Of a DNA stretch of 64,000 nt, positions 7,221-19,276 are shown one piece after another (position 1 is the stretch's first letter; each line of letters begins with the position of its first letter). A program made the translations under genes and the position numbers. The stretch is from Hyphochytrium catenoides (lineage: Eukaryota > Protista > Hyphochytriomycota). The stretch lies in NCBI GenBank assembly GCA_900088475.1, contig FLMG01003887.1, positions 242-64,241 on the forward strand, in the 5' to 3' direction. Below the pieces are notes generated by a model that was given only the letters and a program-made list of their open reading frames with translations, did no database searches and was not told where the DNA came from.

Positions 7221-10200
7221 ATGGCCGATAAGGTGTATGGCTCTCCATCGTGTAGGATGATTAGGACGCCAGACGCGCAAAACAATCAAGAGACTTCGCC
7301 TGCTACGGATGAAGGCCGTGCCTATCAGAGTCTTTCTGGAGGGTTGTTTGGGTCCTTCTCTAGGGCCGTCCATACGCCAAGCTATAGCTCCCAGACACCT
7401 CCTGGCTACCGGCAGCGCGCATCTGCTTTGGAAGGCGAATTAGGAGGACGAGAAAACAGCTTAGAGGGTTCAAGAAGCGGCCGTCCGGGTGATCTCTTTG
7501 ACAGCTCTACTTGGAAGCAACCACTGCAAAATCTCTTTGAAGGGGCCGAAAAGGAAGGAATCAAGGACAAGAAGTTCGAGGAGGAAGAGCATGAAGATCT
7601 CATCAAATGGATGCCAGAACCTGAAGGGGTGATTGTGACAAGCGTGAGCATTGAGAGGGATGCACTGATTCCTTACTGCTTGTTTATTGTGGAGGTGAGA
7701 CCAGGTCTATTATGCTCTAGCTCTTACACATAAGTGTGTTGCTCTTGTCTTGCCTCTTTAGTCATATCACTGTTTTTCCAATGTCTTTTTAAGTCTATCC
7801 ATCTACCCGGCTGCCCGTCAGCAGCTGCTGTCTGCCTTGGGCTTAGTCCAAGCCACAGGGAATACTAGGTCCAGGCTCTGCGACTCTCTTCCAGTTCTAC
7901 CGCACGTCTCATTCGTTCTTACTGCCTGACGGTCGTCTCTGTTGGTTGTCTCTTGGCATGCATTGTGGCCCCTCAATTTCTCCATGGGCACCTTCGCTTC
8001 TGTCACATTTCTGACCTTTGTGTTTGACTTGATATGTAGATAAAGAGCGGAAGAACATGGTGGAGTATCAGAGTAACGCAGAAGCAGCTTGTCAGGCTGT
8101 ACATCAGGCTGCGCCTCGAGAACCTTCTTGGCAGAGAGGTATAGAGCTGCACTTACTCTCTGGCCCCTTTCTCTTCTCCCCGTCTTACTTTATATACCGA
8201 TCCTATAAAGTACGCTAAGATAGCACACTCTCTGTGTCCTTTTATGAAGGCCTTTCCGGTGCCGGTGCCCTGGGATTTATTTGTGGAGCGAATTGCTACG
8301 AGAAGAGTGCTAGACGCGCCGATTGTGGAGAAGTATCTGCAGGATTTACTTCGGCATCCGCTCATCAGGAAGTGAGTAGAAATGGAGCATTTGAAGAAGG
8401 AGACAAGATTGAAAAAGAATTGTGGTGTTTGTGCGAAGAAATAACCAGGACCTGATGCGAATGACAGAATGGGCTAGAAAAGCATGGACTTAAGAGCTGC
8501 ATAAGTCTGATTGCTGTGAAGGCTTTGGACAACCATGCACGAAAAGGCTGACCCCTGTGTAACTTGTCAGGTCCAAAGCTATGCAGAACTTTCTGGAGCT
8601 AAGCCCGATGAGGGCCGACATTAGATATGGGCCATCACTGCGAGAGGTGAGACTAGGGGATCGATAAGCCTAAGAACCGAAGACAAGACAACCGGAATAG
8701 AAGAGTTTGTTCTCTTTTTGTCTCAGGGTTACCAAGTTGAGCTGTGCCCCTCTGTCTCTGATCTCTCCTGATCTCACTTTTCCAATCCCTTCACTTGGTT
8801 GCTTAGGGCTACTGATCTCACTTTTCCAATCCCTTCGTATGATTGCTTAGGGCTACTTGCACGTGAAAGTAAAGAGTCATGCTACGTTTTATTCGAAGAG
8901 AATTGGCAGCGGCTGCAGTCATGTCATAGACGTGCTCGTCAATATCATCCAGTACTTACTCCTGGCCTTCTCTATGGCCTTCTTCTTCGTTCCGGTCGCG
9001 ACTGTTCTGTTCTTCAAAGCGCCATTGGTGCTGATATCCGGCAATCCAAGGGTACGAAACAGAAGGCTTAGGTTATCTGCCTCCAAACGGCTCACTTGAC
9101 AACTCTGTCTGCATCGTCAACGGCCTCTCCCCGTCGTCTTTCAAATGTTTCGATGATGGTCGTTTTTGTCTCTAATGATCGTCTGACCTTCAGATTATCA
9201 GCACACCACCAGCATGGAGTGACAGGCTGGACCGGTTCATCAACTATTCTGCGTTCTTCATCTTCTGGCTGTTCTTGTTTGGAGGTAAGACAGCTGCAAA
9301 CCACTGAACGCCATTGAGGTGGCGTTCTGCTAAAAGGACGGAAAGACTGGTTGTTTATAACGCTTGAGCTTTTGAAAGACAGTTATCTTGGGCTACTTGT
9401 TTGAAGCTCTTGCCAGTCTGTTAGCGCTAAGTCTGCTATTCTCTAAATTTACTGTTCCCCTCTGAACTTCGCCGGTGTTTTCCGTAGCCGTTTTCTGGGC
9501 CTATCAGTTCTTCCGTGACCGGATCTTTAAGGAGCGTCGCTGGGTAGTGCTGAAGCCTTCCTGTCTACTGTTTTTCTCTCGGAAAGACGACCTCAAGCCG
9601 ACCGAGGTTCTTCTTTTTGACGATAGCATGCAAGTCCGGAGAAGCACCATTAGACAAGGTAATGATGTAATCTCCTCCTATCTTCGGCATTCGCTAGGAT
9701 CCCCGCTTCTGTCCTAAAGCTCGGCTCTCAAGCTTGGAGAGCATTTAGCTTTGCTCAAGCAATTCTCTTCGGTTTGCAATTCTCAGAAAGCGCTGCTGCT
9801 CACGTCTAAATCCTTGAAGCCCAACACTAACCACCACATGACTTAACCTTTCCTTTCGTGTCTCTTCTTTTCTTAGCACACCGCTGTGGCCTCTATCTCT
9901 CGAAATTCTGCTCTTTCTTACTTGTACCTATTCTTATCCCCGGGTACCTAGTGCTGACCGTTTTCCGTCTAGGGCTAATGTGGATGCCCAATGGGCTCAC
10001 GGTGGATGCTTTGATGGGAACTGTGGAGATGGATGCCGGCCATTTATATGCAGTCATCATACAGTCCCTGTGTTTTATAAGCTCCTATCTCTTCTTTTCC
10101 TTGATGATAGGTGCGTTCGTAGTGTCTGTCGAGTATCTTCAACACTCATCTCTTCCGGTCTCTCTCTCTCTCTAATCAAGAGACCCCTCATTCCACCTTG

Positions 10201-13200
10201 CTATATACCATAATTCTATCTCTGCATAACCTGTGATGCTTTCCTGTGTTTTCACATTGTGGACGCGGCTGTGGCATTCCTCAAGAAGCATTCTTGTTAC
10301 CTCTCCCCTATCGCACATGGCAGTATATGTTGATATGGATGCCTCTTCCTTGCCAGCCTTTCCTTGCCACAACGTTCCTGACTTGCCGCCCTATCCTCAA
10401 TAACAGAACCTGGTCTTAGCCCATTTGAGCCAGCCCAAGCAGCCGGAAATGCTTTCAATATGTCTTCCTACCCTCCTCCGTTCCTCTTTGTCCCGACCAC
10501 TGCCAATCCTGGGGACACGTCTGCACAGACCGAGCCCGCTCTCAATTTCAGCTCCTGCGGCTACTTTCTGGAAGCTCGAGGACCCACCATCTTGTTTGTC
10601 AACTCAGAAGAGTTCAGGGCACCTGTTAAGGTACAGCTTGACCGAGGGTGTCTTACTACTCTCCCTTCTTGTACATTATACTATCCGCCGTCGACTTTCC
10701 TCGCCCTGAGCATTGTAGTGTCGGGGTAGAGTCACGCTATTCCGAAGCCGCCGCTCTTGCTGACAAGCTTACCTTACTGTTCTTAATGACGGTGTTACCT
10801 TCTTCTGGCCTTGAATGCTCAATGAGTCCGCCGTGTCATTCGCGTCGCGTTCACATGTGTTGTAGGCTATTATTCGCAAGAAAGGATTAACCGACGAGCC
10901 AACTAGATGGAGCTACACGAATTGGCACTTTCTATTCGATATTTCTCCATACAATGTCCGCTTCGAATCCATCTTCCAGCAGGGGGAGCAAGTCATAGCG
11001 GAAGAGGGGGACTATGCAGGCGTTGTTGCCAATATCCCCTCTGTGGCTGCATCCATTGGGCAGAATTACTCATCATTTTTCATCTATACTGAAGGCAGGC
11101 CATTCGAGGTTGACGTCCCAGGAGGTAAGATATCTTGTCATGCAAATGAATTGATTCTGGTGGCGTGGTTCTGGCGTCCGGTCTGCTGCTGTCCTCACTC
11201 CCTGGCCATACTGTCCTCCTCTTCGTTACGCAGATCACAATGTTTTTCTTCGTGGTCTGACGTCTCAAGATACGGTTCAGTCCATATATCAGGACAGTCG
11301 ATTTCAGCCTACGGATCAGTTTCTGTGCAATATTCCCGTGATGATTGGAGAATATCGTGAGTAATTTGCGTAGGAGTGAGCAGTGTGGATGTTGACGTTC
11401 TGTGCGCTGCTATCTATGGCCTTCCAAAGCCAAGAAGTTATCTTCCCTCTTTTGAACAGTTGGCTTTTTGGTCTACAACCACTTCATTTGCCTTGGTCAG
11501 TGGTACGCTCAATCGTTTTCGGGATATGTCTCTATCAACTAGTGGGTTCTGGTCTCTTGAAGGGTGAATCTGACCGACGTATTTTTGCAGAGTCAAGTAG
11601 CTGGTCCACGATTTGGCTAGTCTGTATTAGTGGAGCACTTGTCGCTGTCTTCCTCACGTTCGGCATCTCTTTATTTCTTGCCAAAGTCGGACTCTGCCAT
11701 GCCAATTCCAGGCGGTATGACACCTTCCTCCTTGCTGAGACAATCTTGGTCGCTTGCTCTGTCCCGTTGCTTTGGTTCCTTGCCAGCTGCTTATGTCTCT
11801 TCACTGTTTCCACGCAACTGTTTGGTGGAGACATTCGTCTTTATGCTAAGGTTAAGCATTGCTTTTAGGTCGTTTTGACAAATCGTTCATTTCCATGCCA
11901 AGTCTAATAATAACTACTTCCCTTCCGATGTCTACTGATTGTCGATGAGCAGCGATAATTGGCTTTACCTATTGAAAGAAGTTAGGGAACATTCCTCATG
12001 GAAGCGCAAAAACCGCTTCAAGTCGTTTGCTCCTGTCCGCCAGCCACGAAATTCGGAAGACCCACATGCAACGACTTCGTCTTTTAAAGAGCTAGACAAG
12101 GTACGTTTACTCTTCTAAAAGCACTTGACGGAGCTTCAGCATCGGTCCAGAAGTCTGTTCTTATCTTTCCTATCACCTTTCATCTCCTCTTGGCTATTCC
12201 AGCACTTGCCCTCTGCGCTACCCATTCCCAACTTGTCTGTAGATCAACTAGTATTCGAGTACTTTGCCTATTCATTACATATGGCAGTCTAGGTTCTGAT
12301 ACTCTAGTCTTTGCTCTACGGTTCCTCGCAGGGAAGTAGCAAAGTCTTGCGGGCACGATTTCCATCTAAGCAGAGCACCACCAGGATTGTAAGCAAGCGC
12401 TACCCTCATCTTTCGTTCAAGATTTCCGGAGGGGAGGGCATCGATCTGCTTTCTCCGTCTGAAGCCATCTCCTTCCCATTTCACTCTGCGACTTCCCAAA
12501 CTGTGGCACACTCACTTGGGGGAAATAGCTCGGGTGAGCTGAGAGCTAACGGTCATGGGCAGTCCATAAGTACTCCTCCAGCCTCATTCAAAGACTTGGA
12601 AGACGAAGAAGCACAGCCAGAAAAACGAGAAAGGGAGACTGACGAAGATGGCGCTGAGGGAGGTATTGCCGTTAAGGAAGAGCTCAATGGGCCGAAGGTC
12701 AAGTTATTCGTTGATGCGGAACGTACCTTCTCCGCCATGTATGCCGCACTTGTGGCTGCGGAAGAGCAGGTTTGGCGTCTAAACTCTCCTTTCTCCCACT
12801 TCCTTTTCTACACATCCATGCTACACTGTGGCTTCCAGGTTACCGCTGGGTTTGCTATCGGTGGTTACACTTTCAGTTCTCGCTTGGTTTTCCCTAATCC
12901 TTCCATTAGCCTTCTATAATACACTCTCCCGTGCGGCATCTAGCTGACGATCACTCTATACGCTATAGATTTTGATTGCAGGCTGGTGGATCTGTCCTGA
13001 CGTCCACCTTGTACGGAAACCTCATCTTTTTGGAGATAGCAAGTTGGACAATCTTCTGTTAAAGAAAGCGGAAGGTGAGTTCTACTAGCATCTCGGGCCC
13101 TGCTCCACGCATTTCTGCACTTTCTGCTCTCCTTCTTCATAAGGGAGAACCGAGCATCTCGGGAAACCTAGTGTTTTTACAGCCAAATGGGCGCTCATGG

Positions 13201-16200
13201 AAAGAAGTAATGCGTTTCGAACAGAAAAGTAGATCTCTCGGCGGTCTCTAACTCTTGCCCCTCGTGCCTCGTGCCTCACGGTGAATTCGGTGCGCTCGAT
13301 TCTTGCTCTTTATCATCATCAAACCCCGACTCAATGTGGCGCAGAGGGGGTAGAGATCTACATCCTAATGTACAAAGAAGTAGCGCTGGCACTGACATTG
13401 AATAGTGCGTACACAAAGAGGCGGTTGATGCAGCATCAGAATATTCACATTATCAGACATCCCGAGGACTTCCAGCTGCTGGACCTGGGTTTCTGGTCTC
13501 ATCATGAGAAAATTCTCTGTGTCGACCAGAGGGTTGCCTTTGTGGGAGGTAGGAAGAGCCACAAGATTGCAATTTCCTGAACCCTCACTATACATCTGAG
13601 CCTTTTTACGAGCTACGTGCAGACCTTTTTCGTGAGAGGCGTGTTTGATTGTATCTCGTCCGTTGGCTAGTGGTACGCTTTTCGACTTTTGTTCTGCCAA
13701 TTGACCCGATCTTTCCCTTGCAGGTTTGGACCTTTGTTTTGGTCGGTGGGACACTCCCGATCACAGACTAGTCGATAGTGAACAGCCTTACACCTGGCCT
13801 GGAAAAGACTACTCGAACCCCAGGCAAGAAGCTGCACGTTTCACACTAGCTCCCGCTGTGGCTCTATTGTCCGTTCCATAAAATCCTGTTCTTGAAAGCT
13901 TGCTATGTTGACCCGCCAAATTGCGGTACCTGTCAGATTGCGATTACGTCTTTCTTCTAACACCTTCTTCGTGGACACAGGGTAAAGGACTTTGTTGAGC
14001 TGGACAAACCTTATGAAGATCTAGTTGATAGAAAATCAGTCCCAAGAATGCCATGGCACGATGTCCACTGCGGGTAAGTAGAGATAAAACGTACGAGGTT
14101 AAGCCTATGGAGACGCTGTTGGTAGTCTCCCAGGAGCCTTACGTCCTCTGGTCTGCAGTGTCTTTGGTCTACCAGCTCAAGATATTGGACGACACTTTGT
14201 GCTTCGGTGGAACTACATTTGTATGGGAGTGCGCTATGACCTTAAGACAGGTGAGGGGGAACGGAGTTAGTCGCAAGTATTGTCGCCTTCCTGTGGACCT
14301 CTTTTCAAGGTTTCTGATAGCTACATTTGTCATGCGAGTTGGCCAGAGTGCTCTGATGGCAAGAACTACTGATGTTGGTCATTCGCTTGTCTTCAAACTC
14401 CACCCTGTTCTCTCTCCTTTATTGGCATGGCTGCCTGGCTCTCCAACAGTTGCCTTTTATGTTCACTCTTATCAAGTACTCCCATTCACTGTGGATCACG
14501 CGACTCTTTAGGTCTTTGTCGCTGTTTTCGGCGGCGTCGGCTTCGTCGTGTCGAAAAGTGCCTGATACCCTACGACTATCAGAATATCTCTGATTCCACG
14601 TCGAGCGAAGATTTTGCTCGCTCTTTTGTGGAGGAGCAAGGACCAACTTCTGCTCCACAAAGGTGGATAATAGGGCGTTTAGGGATGCTTTACCTGTTAC
14701 CCTGCCATTGTTGCCCAATTCTACTTTGCCCTGTCTGCTGTCGCATTTGGCCTCCTGGAACGTTTTGTTGACGCCCGTTTCGCCCGTTTCCGTTGGCTGT
14801 CCATCCTTTTGTAATGTCTACCTCTCTTTCGTTCTACTTGGCGCGGTCCGTCTCCTAGGTAATCCTCTGCCGGGGGATAACGCCCGTCGCTAGTGTGCAC
14901 GACGACCTTACCTGTTGTCCATCCATTCCTGAGCGATCTCTGAACAGGCTTGCGCTAACATTGAGCTATATTTTCCCATCATCCAACCCTTTAGTGGGGC
15001 TCCATCAATTTTGGAAAACAACAAGCCTAGTAAAGTCAAAACTCAGGATGTAGTCAAGGTTCCTTCCTCCTCAGCAATGTTGCAGCAGCCTCTACCACCC
15101 CGGTTGTCGGCGCATGGAGGGATAGAGAGGTAGGGAGTGTTGACAATCCTCCACTTCATCATTTCTCGTGCTTTGGTCCGCTAAGTGACAATTGCAATAC
15201 TTGGACCGAACCAGGCTGCTAACAGAGAAATGGCTGCGGACGGCCAGCGCCGTAAGCGAAGACAACTGGGTGGACGCTCAGTGTCAGGTTATTAGGAGTC
15301 TATCCAAGGTACGTAGCGCTTTCCAGACGTCGAGTTTGCTTTGCTTGCTTGTCGCCGTCCCTCACCATTTCTCTCAGCTCACTATCCTGTGTAGGGTGTT
15401 ATGCCAACTCTCCTCTTTCAGCTTAGCGCTCATCGTGTCTATCGTGGTCTATATACCTATTAACGCCGTTCTGCTGATTTTTATATTTTCTTCCTTAGTG
15501 AAGCGTTACATTGCGTTATTGCGTTACGTTTGTGGGTCACCCATGCTCTGCACCATGGCATTTTTTGACCTCGCTTCTTTGGGTGGACCCTGCCGCCTCA
15601 CCCTTGGCTGATCGTCCACTCACCCACCCCACCAACTCCGTTCTGTGTGACCCTTCATGCCACGTAGTGGTCAGGCGGCATAAGAACTGAAGCCAGCATT
15701 CAGAACGCCTATATCAAGCTTATTCATGGCGCCAAGTCATTTATTTATATAGAAAACCAGTTTTTTGTCTCCGGCCTGCAAGGGACTTTTGACGTCAAGA
15801 ACCGGGTGTTGCAGGCGCTTGTTGAGAGGATCACAGAGGCCATCGAGAAAGGAGAGATCTTTCGGGTTATTGTTGTTATGCCTCTTCTCCCAGCGTTCGA
15901 AGGTGAAGTAGACGGAGGGCAGGCATCTACGTTGCATGCTGTGATGCACTGGCAGGTAAGAAAGCTTAACTTTCCAGCTGCAGAAAGCATTGGTTTTACG
16001 ATTCTCCTTTATGTCTTCTTCCACTCCTTGTGGTTTCTCGCCTTCCCTCATTGTTGTCCTGCTGCTAGTATCAAACCATATGCAGAGGAGGACAGTCGCT
16101 GTGGGAGAAGGTTGCAGAATTGACTTCGTCACCTGAAAGCTATGTGGCTTTTTTCGGTCTCCGGACTTATGATACACTTCCTAACGGAGAGTTTGTGACG

Positions 16201-19200
16201 GAACAAATATATGTACATAGTAAATGTATGATAGTTGACGATAGAAAGGTGCTTATAGGGAGTGCCAACATCAACGATAGGAGCCTCAATGGGCACAGGT
16301 AAACATCGCCGTCTATCTTCGAAGTCCCTTCTCAGTCTTCCTACCCAAAGACATGCCCATGAAGGTCTATGCTTTCTTCCTGACTCGGAATGACTCCTCT
16401 CTGGGACCTGACTCCAAAGTGTTTGTTTTGATGTCGCGTCGCGTCGCGTCTTTCACTTCCGTCTTGGCCTTCTCCGAATTCTCATCTGTACTTACCTACA
16501 CCTCCCACCTCACTTCGTTTTCAATTGGGCTTTCCCCTGTTTTACTCTCAACGCTGGGTGCCGTATCCTTTGTAGGGACTCCGAGATCGCTGTGGTAATA
16601 GAGGACGTCAACTTCATTGAAGGCTTCCTCGCTGGTAAACCCGCAGCGTTGGGAGTCACCGCTCATCAGCTTCGCCTCTCTCTTTTTAGAGAGCACCTAG
16701 GGATACAAGAGGACAACGATGAGAAGATACGGCAGATCCTGGATCCAGCTGCAGACGAATGTTGGGTGAGCGTCTTTTCCTTCTCAGATCGTGTACATAC
16801 TAGTTGACCTCTCTTTCTGTTTGCAAGGTGGTATCTCTTCTTTTTGCATCCCCATGCGAATACCACTGGCTTGTTGCTCCCCTTGCCCCTAGTTCTTCGA
16901 CGTAGCTCCTAACATGCTGTCCATTCTTCTCTCGCTGTTAGTCATTCACACTTCTGCGTAAACTTTCGTTGACCGAGTTTCTTCGTTTCACCATATGCCT
17001 GCCTTTCTCAGGGGTATATTAATGCAAGGGCAAAAAAGAACACTGACATCTACGAAGCAGTTTTTCATCCATTCCCGTCTGATAGAGTAAAGACCTTTAA
17101 CGATATTCGGTACGGTTGACTGCATCCACTGCCCCTTCTTTCTCTCTTTTGGGATGGACCCAGTCTTGACGTTGCGTCTCTAGCTCATAGTGTACCCTCG
17201 TCCTAGTGTAGTTTCAATGCTGATTTCGTATCCCGTCCGGGCTCATATTTATCCCTTTCTTCTATATGCTGCATCTTGTTACGCCCAGCGGCTATGAGCT
17301 GGACGAAGTCTTCGAAAATCAGCGACACAACCGACTGCGAATGCAGCGGTGGTCGCAGGACAATTTGAATGAAGATGATCCACCTTCCTGGTGCGACATA
17401 GCTGGCAGACCAGTCACAGGTAAGCAAAAGAGATCACTCCTCACTAAAGCCTCAAATGTTAAGTTCGAATTAGTCCCTGAATAGAAGTACTTGAGGGTCG
17501 TGCATGGGAGCTTTGTCATCTAGGAATGGGTGACGTATTGAATATGCTGTCTGGCATAGGTTTTTGATGTTTCTTCTTTCCCAAACCTGTACAAGGTCAC
17601 GCCTTTGATCTCTCGGGCTGGGTAGTGGCAAAGCCGTCAGAGGAGGAAACTCTCCCGACAGACGAGGAAGGCTGGGTCTACGCTTTCTCATTCTCTACGC
17701 TTAACCTTCCTATTCATGAGCGACCAATCTGGACAGGGACAGCTCTCAAGTAAGCGGATCGACCTTCATTTATCCATGAATTCCTCTCTGATTTATTGGG
17801 ACATTCTCCTTTTGACCATCGCTGTTGACTTCTATCATATTCTCTCCTCGCTTGCTTCGTCTTCCTCCATTATTGTCGACATCCCTGAAAGTTATCTCTT
17901 CTTCCCTTATCACGTTCTGAGGTCCACTATCTTTGCTTCGTCGCATAGTAACGGATCTTGAACTTTCTATAGGCCCATTGCTGCTGTCCGACGCCGTCGA
18001 TGGGTACGCGCGGAACGCCTCTCTGGGTCAGAGGTTCTTATCACGCCCAGAAACTCTGGACCGAATATTCACAAGCCGGGGCCAGATGCCATGAGTGCTC
18101 TCCACCGACTGGTCAATGAGGAGGAACGAGAGGATAGGATTGCAGGCAGGAAAGACACAGTTGAGATAATGTAAGCTGTCCTGCTCTTCCTTTGCTCTTG
18201 TCCCCTCTTACAATGGCTAACTTGAGTGATATTTTTCCGTGCAGAACGCCGCGTCAGGACTCTCCATCCTCTTCCTTCCCACCAGAAGGAAGCCAGAGGA
18301 GAGGAAGGAAGGATTCCTCTGCATTTTGGATTGAAGGGATGCTGGACTTGGCGAAGAGTCAGGCTCAAAGTCTTCTCTCGTCCACCGCGGCAGCGGGTAC
18401 ACAAATTATGCAGAGATTAGACAAGAAGGCTGAAGAGAATCCCAGTTCTAATTCCCCCCCAGTACGTCCTCCCAGCTGCGGGCAGATTTCTACCTCTTCA
18501 TTCGAGATGCCATGCTATTCAGTCTGCCTGCCCATTCGTCTGTTGGTTTCTGTTATTCTGAAGGGAAGCTCTCGAAATCTTAGGTTGTCCTTCAATTGAC
18601 CTCTAATTCTGTTTTCTTTCATTCTCTTTCTTCCTGTTTCTGTCTCTTTCTCACTCTGCTCGTTCTCTCCATGCGGACGCTGATCTTCTTGCATTGCCTT
18701 CAGATGAGACTTGAGGATGCGAACAAGCTGAATCAAATCAACACGCTCACTCGAGTGCCAAAAGGTGGAGGAGGAGTACCAACAGAGGATTATCTAGCGG
18801 GAATGGATCTCATTGCTGGAGACAAAGAGGAGGAAGAGGAAGAGGATGAGGACAAGGAGTATGACATAAGTGGCATTATTCTCGATACTCTGCAGACAAT
18901 GAAAGAGAGGAAAGGGCCTGACGAGGGAACTCTTGCGCCTCCTCCAGATGGATCTGCAGAGAGAGTCATTCCACGTGAAAAAGGTGTACCTTCATCTGGA
19001 TCTTCACCTATCCTCCCTACGCCTGTGGCAGAAGAAGAGAAGCGCGCATCTTTCTCTCCGGCGTGCCCGCCGTCTTCTTTCGTAGACGCGAAGTTAGTGG
19101 ACACTGTGACGAGCCCCACTGCGCTTAACTATTTAGCAGAAATGGACCAGTGGAACCGAGGCATCATCATGAAGAGGCTTTCGAAGATTGAAGGCAACTT

Positions 19201-19276
19201 AGTGAAGTTTCCTCTGCAGTTTCTGGTGAATGAGAATTTGAAGCCTTCGATGCTGCCCAAGGATTTGCACATATAG
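7221..19276 (+). CDS. Multi-exon phospholipase D of the PX-PH (PLD1/zeta) lineage with transmembrane insertions and a DysF insertion; start codon uncertain
   Basis: Spliced exons give PX-like QNFLELS, PH-like [49 protein letters not shown]1 (HHEKILCVD), [29 protein letters not shown]2 (VHSKCMIVD...GSANINDRS), [10 protein letters not shown] and C-terminal [13 protein letters not shown]. Stop ends at 19276. Confidence 0.93.
8768..8857 (+). repeat. 44-bp tandem duplication spanning a PLD 3' splice site
   Basis: ctgatctcacttttccaatcccttc-acttggtt-gcttagggctac is followed by ctgatctcacttttccaatcccttc-gtatgatt-gcttagggctac (copies start at 8768 and 8812). Confidence 0.95.

What the first reader, a model, noticed from the sequence alone, without database searches (positions are those of the whole stretch)
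17289..18012. DysF (dysferlin/Pex24-Pex30) domain inserted in the PLD C-terminal region
Seen: right after the conserved PLD segment [23 protein letters not shown], three exons (17289-17419, ~17595-17748, 17973 onward) splice in frame to [12 protein letters not shown]...W...PPSWCDIAG...GWVV...[12 protein letters not shown]...W...AVRRRRWVR. The conserved [13 protein letters not shown] tail resumes only after a further long linker. Established: FENQR, D.EGW.YA and VRRRRW.R are DysF hallmarks, found in ferlins, Pex30-family and TECPR1 proteins, where the domain has been linked to lipid binding (phosphatidic acid for Pex30, sphingomyelin for TECPR1). Inference: a PA-producing enzyme carrying a possible lipid/product-sensing or contact-site module. 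I do not know PX-TM-PH-HKD2-DysF as a characterised architecture.
Basis: partly seen in the sequence, partly recalled or inferred. Interest (0 to 1): 0.8.

Follow-up and report, generated by a model that had tools for sequence, protein, structure and literature searches.

The report
DysF lipid-binding domain inside membrane-anchored phospholipase D
This phospholipase D gene carries a genuine DysF (dysferlin/TECPR1-type) membrane-lipid-binding domain where other such enzymes have a short link; the same unannotated insert is in every membrane-anchored phospholipase D of water moulds I examined, so it is an old feature.

Summary
Three GT-AG exons (17289-17419, 17596-17749, 17973-18170) read in frame between the PLD block [11 protein letters not shown] and the [13 protein letters not shown] tail.

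A profile built only from other organisms' PLD inserts ranks these exons 1, 2 and 3 among 2057 open pieces of the window, in colinear order (E 4.6e-9, 1.1e-5, 0.13). The insert-family profile matches the crystallised TECPR1 N-terminal DysF domain (8P5P, E 3.8e-7). An AlphaFold model of the Aphanomyces insert finds only DysF domains in the PDB (Z 8.0).

Pfam's Pex24p model sees none of this, in the exons or in eight full-length relatives.

The insert is not unique to this genome:
- It sits in one uninterrupted ORF in oomycete PXTM-PLDs.
- It is in a smaller transmembrane-hairpin PLD of Saprolegniales.
- It is in a second PLD paralogue of this genome.
- Oomycete PXPH-PLDs lack it.

No paper I could search describes it. 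Splicing could not be checked with RNA, and lipid binding is inferred. The genome statistics fit Hyphochytrium catenoides.

The scan noted DysF-in-PLD before, on this stretch and on other pieces of this genome.

The parts
13233..13577 (+). Open piece holding the HKD1 exon of the phospholipase D
   Evidence: Pfam PLDc, 22.8 bits against a cut-off of 21.9.
15668..15955 (+). Catalytic exon with the IYIENQFF block. Used as the query that recovered the relatives.
   Evidence: 1462 PLDs at E<=0.001.
16069..16299 (+). HKD2 exon ([11 protein letters not shown]...[10 protein letters not shown])
   Evidence: Pfam PLDc 33.3 bits and PLDc_2 29.4 bits, both over their cut-offs.
17012..17109 (+). Exon with the conserved PLD block [25 protein letters not shown], directly upstream of the insert
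   Evidence: It aligns to NANIYEQIFRCLPSN of human PLD2 through the homologue P0007.
17289..17419 (+). DysF exon 1: first long strand with FENQR, then the W...L...SWCDIAG loop
   Evidence: E 4.6e-9 against the insert profile built without window rows.
17596..17749 (+). DysF exon 2: GWVV ... [12 protein letters not shown] core and the tip loop HERPIW
   Evidence: E 1.1e-5.
17973..18170 (+). Exon 3: last DysF strand [12 protein letters not shown] (to about 18015), then the start of the linker
   Evidence: Third-ranked piece, E 0.13, colinear with the other two.
18245..18461 (+). Linker exon, 72 codons, no family match
18704..19276 (+). Last exon: acidic low-complexity linker, the conserved PLD C-terminal tail [29 protein letters not shown], and the stop codon
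   Evidence: The tail motif is shared with 51 of the 150 relatives.
8914..9036 (+). Pair of strongly hydrophobic, transmembrane-like segments upstream in the same gene. Context only.
Evidence: Kyte-Doolittle scan.
11611..11799 (+). Second pair of transmembrane-like segments in the same gene. Context only.
   Evidence: Kyte-Doolittle scan, scores 2.4.

Best explanation
The three exons encode a single DysF domain of about 110-117 residues. This is the 'finger' fold of dysferlin, TECPR1 and Pex30. It is a constitutive part of a membrane-anchored PX/transmembrane-type phospholipase D.

The domain replaces the roughly 23-residue connector that, in human PLD2, joins the last helix block of the catalytic domain to the C-terminal tail. 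About 20 residues separate it from the catalytic core on its N-terminal side. A linker of about 270 residues, with no family match and partly low-complexity, leads from it back to the tail. These points are shown: the exons, their homology to the inserts of oomycete PLDs, the DysF identity of that insert family, and its restriction to the transmembrane-bearing PLD clade.

The mechanism is inferred. In Pex30 and TECPR1 the basic and aromatic tip of the finger dips into the bilayer. Here the corresponding loops read NRLRMQRW and HERPIW. I propose that this tip docks the catalytic domain on the cytosolic leaflet where a particular lipid is enriched. The most likely lipid is an anionic one such as phosphatidic acid, the enzyme's own product. 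That would hold or activate the enzyme where it has begun to act.
For: - Exons and phases.
- Exon-by-exon matches to a profile built from other organisms only.
- Colinear alignment with 15 inserts. The window keeps 14 of the 16 columns invariant in all 28 non-window rows, and VRRR as well.
- Insert profile against PDB sequences: TECPR1 N-terminal DysF 8p5p_A, E 3.8e-7, covering chain positions 13-108 of 116.
- AlphaFold model of the Aphanomyces insert: pLDDT 79.4, pTM 0.73, with long terminal strands 14-22 and 96-103.
- Foldseek: the top 13 hits are all DysF, and nothing else scores below E 8.
- VIA: Z 8.0, 87 residues aligned, rmsd 3.0 Å to 8P5P; Z 5.5-6.7 to myoferlin and dysferlin.
- ESM Atlas neighbours are clusters carrying Pex24p/DysF.
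- The same insert lies in one uninterrupted 1799-codon ORF in an oomycete-type contig.
- It is in PXTM-PLDs of Phytophthora, Pythium, Bremia, Plasmopara, Peronospora, Albugo, Lagenidium, Aphanomyces and Thraustotheca.
- It is in transmembrane-hairpin PLDs of about 1050-1130 residues in Saprolegniales.
- It is in a second paralogue of this genome.
- DysF domains of Pex30, its relatives and dysferlin bind phosphatidic acid through a basic and aromatic tip (PMC12101077, PMC12101078). TECPR1 uses the same tip for sphingomyelin (PMC10476172).
Against: - The curated Pfam model PF06398 does not detect the domain: not in the exons, not in the genome-wide scan, and not in eight full-length relatives.
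- No transcript evidence for the junctions could be obtained.
- Exons 1+2 (285 nt) and exons 1-3 (483 nt) are multiples of three, so an isoform without the domain would stay in frame.
- The fold was predicted for a homologue about 30% identical, not for the window's own peptide.
- The sphingomyelin-contact residues of TECPR1 are not conserved, and lipid specificity cannot be read from sequence. No lipid binding has been measured for any PLD insert.
Confidence: 0.65

Rival explanations
1. The insert has the DysF fold but does not bind lipid. It would serve as a rigid spacer or as a protein-protein interaction surface, for example through its Trp/Arg stacks, as was first proposed for the dysferlin inner DysF domain. 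That could regulate the C-terminal tail's packing into the catalytic core.
For: - The enzyme is already membrane-anchored by transmembrane segments, so a further membrane anchor is not obviously needed.
- The TECPR1 lipid-contact residues W77, L88, L89, I142 and K152-W154 are not conserved.
- The ferlin inner DysF domains were not recruited to damaged membranes (PMC10476172).
Against: - The DysF domains of Pex30, of its family members and of dysferlin all bound phosphatidic acid in vitro (PMC12101078).
- The tip loops of the insert are rich in Arg, Lys and Trp in all three types.
- The domain sits only about 20 residues from a catalytic domain that must itself touch the bilayer.
Confidence: 0.2
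2. In this organism the DysF exons are cassette exons. The main transcript skips them, or uses them only under some conditions, so the usual enzyme has a plain connector.
For: - Exons 1+2 (285 nt) and exons 1-3 (483 nt) can be skipped without a frameshift. This is my arithmetic on the lengths.
- No RNA data were available.
Against: - The window keeps 14 of the 16 columns invariant in all 28 non-window rows, and all splice sites are intact.
- The paralogue at C3628 keeps the domain too.
- In a relative with one uninterrupted ORF, and in P. infestans PXTM-PLD, which is listed as intronless (PMC3056787), the domain cannot be skipped.
Confidence: 0.1
3. The motifs are a chance resemblance, and the insert is an unrelated lineage-specific loop.
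For: Pfam PF06398 gives no hit. Single exons give no PDB hit by phmmer.
Against: - Profile E 3.8e-7 to a crystallised DysF domain over nearly its whole length.
- A predicted fold that retrieves DysF domains only.
Confidence: 0.02

Closest known systems
Oomycete PXTM-PLD (Phytophthora infestans PITG_00284, 1807 aa; Meijer et al., PMC3056787)
   Same: It has transmembrane segments, two HKD motifs and the IYIENQFF block. It has the same insert at the same site, followed by a long low-complexity linker and the GxLVxFPLxF...DIHI tail.
   Different: The oomycete insert carries an extra basic helix (RKREKLQHFMTDRLMAQ) before VRRRRW. The window's copy lacks this helix, but the paralogue at C3628 has it. 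Oomycete genes are single ORFs, whereas this one is split by introns. The published descriptions list PX, transmembrane segments, a PH remnant and the HKD motifs, and do not mention a DysF domain.
TECPR1 N-terminal DysF domain (PDB 8P5P), a sphingomyelin sensor
   Same: Best sequence and structure match (E 3.8e-7; Z 8.0; 34% identity to the modelled homologue). It shares ENQR, WxD..G, GWxYA..F and VRRRxW, which include the core residues W138, R159 and R161.
   Different: The sphingomyelin-contact residues are not kept. W77 is His here and Leu/Ile/Phe/Met in relatives. L88/L89, I142/D143 and K152/K153 also differ. The host protein is an autophagy E3 adaptor, not a lipid enzyme.
Pex30/Pex23-family DysF domain (Pfam PF06398), a phosphatidic-acid binder at ER contact sites
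   Same: Same domain superfamily. It sits on a membrane-embedded protein, and its tip is rich in aromatic and basic residues (PMC12101077, PMC12101078).
   Different: The Pfam model built on this family does not score the PLD inserts. A true Pex24p-type DysF in this same genome (L001) aligns only weakly to exon 2, at pairwise E 8e-4.
Human PLD1/PLD2 catalytic domain (6U8Z, 6OHM)
   Same: HKD2, the NxNIYE..F..P block and the C-terminal tail all align.
   Different: About 23 residues join the block to the tail in PLD2. The corresponding stretch is about 158 residues in Aphanomyces P0007. Measured instead from the NTDIY block to the tail motif, the window's distance is about 420 residues, against 42-69 in 22 of the 25 relatives without the insert.

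Membership tests
DysF domain (SMART DysFN/DysFC; Pfam PF06398 C-terminal part) | Match to the curated family profile | tested here: not met
   PF06398 gives no hit on the three exons at E<=10. In the own-genome six-frame scan at E<=10 it hits three other loci but not this one. It gives no hit on eight full-length insert-bearing PLDs at E<=1. SMART models are not available here.
DysF domain (SMART DysFN/DysFC; Pfam PF06398 C-terminal part) | Significant sequence similarity to a DysF domain of solved structure, over the whole domain | tested here: met
   The profile of 15 inserts plus the window exons matches 8p5p_A at E 3.8e-7 and 33.4 bits, profile positions 14-108 against chain positions 13-108 of 116. 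The next hit has E 0.14.
DysF domain (SMART DysFN/DysFC; Pfam PF06398 C-terminal part) | Fold: two long antiparallel strands from the two termini, joined by a long loop wrapped around them | tested here: met
   This was tested on the homologue P0007:893-1006, not on the window's own peptide. The model has strands 14-22 and 96-103 and pLDDT 79.4. The top 13 Foldseek hits are all DysF. VIA gives Z 8.0 to 8P5P and 5.5-6.7 to ferlins.
DysF domain (SMART DysFN/DysFC; Pfam PF06398 C-terminal part) | Trp/Arg stacking residues (TECPR1 W116, W118, W122, W138; R159, R161, R165, R167) | tested here: inconclusive
   Equivalents of W138 (GWxYA) and R159/R161 (VRRRRW) are invariant and present in the window. 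Only one Trp (GWVV) stands where TECPR1 has W116/W118/W122, and the oomycete long type has Phe there.
DysF domain (SMART DysFN/DysFC; Pfam PF06398 C-terminal part) | Direct binding of membrane lipid | not testable with these tools
   Needs liposome binding with purified domain.
TECPR1-type sphingomyelin-sensing DysF | Tip residues W77, L88, L89, I142, K152, K153 and W154, required for sphingomyelin binding (PMC10476172) | tested here: not met
   By the alignment, W77 is His in the window (FENQRH) and L/I/F/M in relatives. L88/L89 fall on K/E-type residues. I142/D143 are F/S. None of these is among the conserved columns.
PXTM-PLD subfamily (Meijer and Govers) | Two HKD motifs plus the IYIENQFF block and the C-terminal tail | tested here: met
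   PLDc is over its cut-off on both HKD exons. [10 protein letters not shown] and [13 protein letters not shown] appear.
PXTM-PLD subfamily (Meijer and Govers) | Transmembrane segments between PX and the catalytic domain | tested here: met
   A crude hydropathy scan only. It finds hydrophobic 19-mers at 8914-9036 and 11611-11799. All 14 insert-bearing full-length PLDs scanned have 2-9 such segments, while 8 PLDs without the insert have none.
PXTM-PLD subfamily (Meijer and Govers) | N-terminal PX domain | tested here: inconclusive
   The candidate exon piece 8145-8372 gives no Pfam hit at E<=0.1. PX is also weak in relatives, at E 0.06-0.2.

The most novel reading that the evidence does not exclude
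The DysF finger is a built-in product sensor. It would bind the phosphatidic acid that the adjacent catalytic site makes, giving feed-forward retention or activation of a membrane-anchored PLD. If so, this natural fusion would be genomic evidence that phosphatidic acid, or the packing defects it causes, is an ancestral DysF ligand. It would also be one instance of a lineage-wide attachment of DysF to lipid-handling machinery in oomycetes and hyphochytrids. Earlier scan notes, which I did not test, list a flippase, Beclin-1, a formin and a sterol glucosyltransferase in this genome.
Probability: 0.25. Interest if true: 0.75.

Novelty: new variant of a known kind. Interest (0 to 1): 0.55.

Why it matters
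PXTM-PLD is a single-copy, lineage-specific enzyme of oomycetes, a group that includes major crop and fish pathogens. Its described parts (PX, transmembrane segments, a PH remnant, HKD motifs) left about 400 C-terminal residues unexplained. Assigning a DysF domain there gives a concrete, testable handle on how this enzyme is placed or regulated.

For the DysF field, the domain's role in dysferlin disease is still unclear. A conserved fusion of DysF to the enzyme that makes phosphatidic acid supports the recent finding that DysF domains bind that lipid. It also offers a simple system in which to test specificity.

Tried and rejected
- **Pfam scan of each exon** at E<=10 gave nothing.
- **phmmer of each exon against PDB sequences** gave nothing relevant.
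- **Own-genome scan with PF06398** found three other DysF loci but not this one.
- **Pairwise BLASTP to the genome's own Pex24p-type DysF (L001)** gave only exon 2 at E 8e-4.
- **Pfam on eight full-length relatives** found PLDc/PX only.
- **Word search with the L001 DysF ORF**, meant to build a bona fide DysF alignment for a profile-profile test, found nothing. That test was therefore not run.
- **ESM Atlas search by features** gave no usable hit.
- **RNA evidence** could not be obtained. The single run offered (X1, kind guessed) held only low-complexity GAG-repeat matches and one 244-base contig in the last exon, with no junctions.
- **Assigning the window's copy to the short or the long insert type** by separate profiles was inconclusive, so I make no orthology claim.
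- **One paper search was wasted**: 'DysF' as a word start matches 'dysfunction'.
joining the exon peptides for a Pfam/SMART scan or a fold of the window's own domain.
Full report
**The gene.** The window holds a multi-exon phospholipase D gene on the + strand, from about 8100 to 19276.
- Pfam PLDc is over its cut-off on the HKD1 piece (13233-13577) and the HKD2 exon (16069-16299).
- The IYIENQFF block lies in 15668-15955 and the C-terminal tail in the last exon.
- Hydrophobic pairs at 8914-9036 and 11611-11799 fit the earlier scan note that this is a PXTM-type, membrane-spanning PLD.
- The genome has 61.0 Mb in 4759 contigs. The published Hyphochytrium catenoides assembly has 4758 scaffolds plus a mitochondrial genome, with introns of about 208 bp on average (PMC5795050). 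I take that organism as likely. This rests on the assembly statistics only.

**The observation.** The three exons are present as described.
- They are 17289-17419, 17596-17749 and 17973-18170, each with an AG acceptor behind a pyrimidine tract and a GTAAG donor.
- Their translations carry [28 protein letters not shown] and [10 protein letters not shown].
- The exon before them ends the conserved block [25 protein letters not shown].
- Downstream, exon 18245-18461 and the last exon 18704-19276 continue in frame to the tail [29 protein letters not shown]. From 17012 this makes 456 codons (my sum).

**Tests on the exons alone.** Taken one at a time, the exons are too short for the standard libraries.
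- Pfam gave nothing at E<=10.
- phmmer against PDB sequences gave nothing relevant.
- A six-frame scan of the whole genome with PF06398 found three other DysF loci but not this one.

**Relatives.** I searched the representative protein library with the neighbouring catalytic exon, 15668-15955.
- Among the 150 best PLD clusters, nine carry YENQR ... D.xGWxYA ... VRRRRW between the NTxIYE block and the tail.
- These nine are the only ones that match a profile of the insert at E<=1.
- In 22 of the 25 tail-bearing relatives without the insert, the block-to-tail distance is 42-69 residues; the other three have 89-157. With the insert it is 171-414. In the window it is about 420.
- Human PLD2 has about 23 residues between the aligned block and the tail, where Aphanomyces P0007 has about 158.

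**Taxonomic range.** The insert is confined to the transmembrane-bearing PLD clade, as far as I could sample it.
- The insert of P0002 is conserved at 48-100% identity in proteins of 1433-2321 residues. These come from Phytophthora, Globisporangium, Pythium, Bremia, Plasmopara (named Pi-PXTM-PLD by its source), Peronospora, Peronosclerospora, Hyaloperonospora, Lagenidium, Albugo, Aphanomyces and Thraustotheca. None has a precomputed Pex24p domain.
- A shorter form of the insert occurs in PLDs of about 1050-1130 residues in Aphanomyces, Thraustotheca and Achlya. These carry one transmembrane hairpin.
- The oomycete PXPH-PLDs lack the insert and have no hydrophobic segments. Examples are Globisporangium P0009, Achlya P0010 (named Pi-PXPH-PLD) and Albugo P0019.
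- All 14 insert-bearing full-length proteins I scanned have 2-9 hydrophobic segments. The 8 without the insert have none. These are relatives, not independent events, so the pattern marks one clade.
- P0002 is encoded by one uninterrupted 5400-nt ORF. In that organism the domain is therefore certainly part of the enzyme.
- The same genome has a second PLD at contig C3628, with HKD2, the NTIIYDDVF block, a two-exon insert of the oomycete long type, and the tail.

**Do the window's exons belong to this insert family?** Yes.
- A profile built from the 15 foreign inserts only, searched against all 2057 open pieces (20 residues or more) of the window in six frames, puts the three exons at ranks 1, 2 and 3. 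The matches are profile 10-54 (E 4.6e-9), 51-92 (E 1.1e-5) and 115-131 (E 0.13). The next piece has E 3.7.
- In the 31-row alignment, the window keeps 14 of the 16 columns invariant in all 28 other rows, and also VRRR.

**Is the insert family a DysF domain?** Yes, by two routes.
- By sequence, the alignment profile searched against all PDB chain sequences hits the TECPR1 N-terminal DysF crystal structure 8P5P. The match has E 3.8e-7 and spans chain positions 13-108 of 116. The next hit has E 0.14.
- By structure, an AlphaFold model of Aphanomyces P0007:893-1006, made with the 31-row alignment, has pLDDT 79.4 and pTM 0.73, with long strands at both ends.
- Foldseek against the PDB returns DysF domains for the first 13 ranks: 8P5P at E 1e-4 and TM 0.55-0.59, then myoferlin, dysferlin, 4CAH and 2K2O. 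Everything else has E>8.
- VIA-align gives Z 8.0 to 8P5P (87 residues, rmsd 3.0 Å, 34% identity) and Z 4.6-6.7 to the ferlin entries. By the tool's own note, Z 8 alone is middling. The weight lies in the exclusivity of the hits and the full-domain coverage.
- The ESM Atlas neighbours are TECPR1, TECPR1-like DysF/VASt, Mug65 and Peroxin/Ferlin clusters. They also include a green-algal DAG-lipase cluster.
- The fold was shown for a homologue about 30% identical to the window's peptide, not for that peptide itself.

**Residue comparison.** Numbering the 8P5P chain from the residues named in PMC10476172, some motifs are shared: ENQR (E73-R76), WxD..G (W95, D97, G100), GWxYA..F (G137-F144) and VRRRxW (V158-W163). 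These include the core stacking residues W138, R159 and R161. The sphingomyelin-binding tip residues are not conserved. W77 is His in the window, and L88/L89, I142/D143 and K152-W154 also differ. The window's tip loops read NRLRMQRW and HERPIW, which are basic and aromatic.

**Function (inference).**
- Pex30's DysF binds phosphatidic acid through aromatic and basic residues at the distal tip. The same property was found for other Pex30-family DysF domains and for dysferlin (PMC12101077, PMC12101078).
- TECPR1 uses the same tip for sphingomyelin.
- Here the finger is tied to the catalytic domain by about 20 residues, so it must act on the same membrane face as the active site.
- I therefore favour a docking or sensing role for an anionic lipid, most attractively the product phosphatidic acid. 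I give about even odds that it binds lipid at all and about one in four that the lipid is phosphatidic acid.
- The rivals are a non-lipid structural or protein-binding role, and cassette-exon use. Exons 1+2 and exons 1-3 are multiples of three, so skipping them would keep the frame.

**Novelty.**
- The published descriptions of PXTM-PLD list PX, five transmembrane segments, a PH remnant, HKD motifs and regulatory motifs. They do not mention dysferlin (PMC3056787).
- The following searches found no paper describing the combination: 'DysF domain' with 'phospholipase D'; 'dysferlin domain' with 'oomycete'; 'dysferlin' with 'Phytophthora'; and 'DysFN' with 'phospholipase D'.
- The library does not cover subscription journals, and I could not query InterPro or SMART.
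- The proteins themselves have been public for years. What is new is the reading of a domain in a known enzyme subfamily and its extension to a hyphochytrid, not a new kind of system.
- Earlier notes of this scan made the same reading on this stretch (s1-336150) and on other pieces of this genome (s1-345849, s1-364992). They also list DysF fusions to other lipid-related proteins. I confirmed only the second PLD locus.

**Limits.**
- There is no RNA evidence. The one run offered gave no junctions.
- The joined-peptide scan and fold were left out by rule.

Noticed in passing
G000:C3628:11268-11870 (L003, L004): A second phospholipase D paralogue in the same genome. It has HKD2, the NTIIYDDVF block, a two-exon DysF insert of the oomycete long type (with the extra helix KERLKWFLTHQRWLAVVRRRVW) and the tail IQGHLVQFPLNFL.
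   Followed up: partly
G000:C2510 (L001 1279-1887, minus strand); C325:77362-77514; C1738:7167-7352; C4037:3048-3209; C1637:8914-9060: Further DysF-like loci in this genome. The C2510 locus is a 202-residue ORF that reaches the Pfam Pex24p cut-off. The others are weaker hits to PF06398 or to the PLD-insert profile. Earlier scan notes list DysF fusions to a flippase, Beclin-1, a formin and a sterol glucosyltransferase.
   Followed up: no
window 17289-18170: Exons 1+2 total 285 nt and exons 1-3 total 483 nt, both multiples of three. Skipping the DysF exons would leave the reading frame intact, so an isoform without the domain is possible.
   Followed up: no
ESM Atlas cluster, row 1: The closest predicted-structure neighbour of the modelled insert (TM 0.69) is a green-algal cluster named sn-1-specific diacylglycerol lipase (Lipase_3). 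DysF-like fingers may therefore be fused to other lipid hydrolases outside this lineage.
   Followed up: no
window 18245-19200: The roughly 270 residues between the DysF domain and the tail have no family match. They include an acidic GAG-repeat run ([12 protein letters not shown]) and a possibly amphipathic stretch ([19 protein letters not shown]). Oomycete PXTM-PLDs have a linker of similar length but different sequence.
   Followed up: no
window 18998-19241: One 244-base contig of public run X1 (kind guessed as RNA) matches the last exon with a single difference. Everything else laid from that run was low-complexity GAG repeat.
   Followed up: no
P0163, P0182, P0183, P0186; P0001: Some database models of relatives look like merged or duplicated gene models. 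Phytophthora PLDs of 1743-2321 residues carry PF02515. The Thraustotheca PXTM-PLD carries a mitochondrial-carrier domain. A Gymnodinium transcript repeats its HKD2 region.
   Followed up: no
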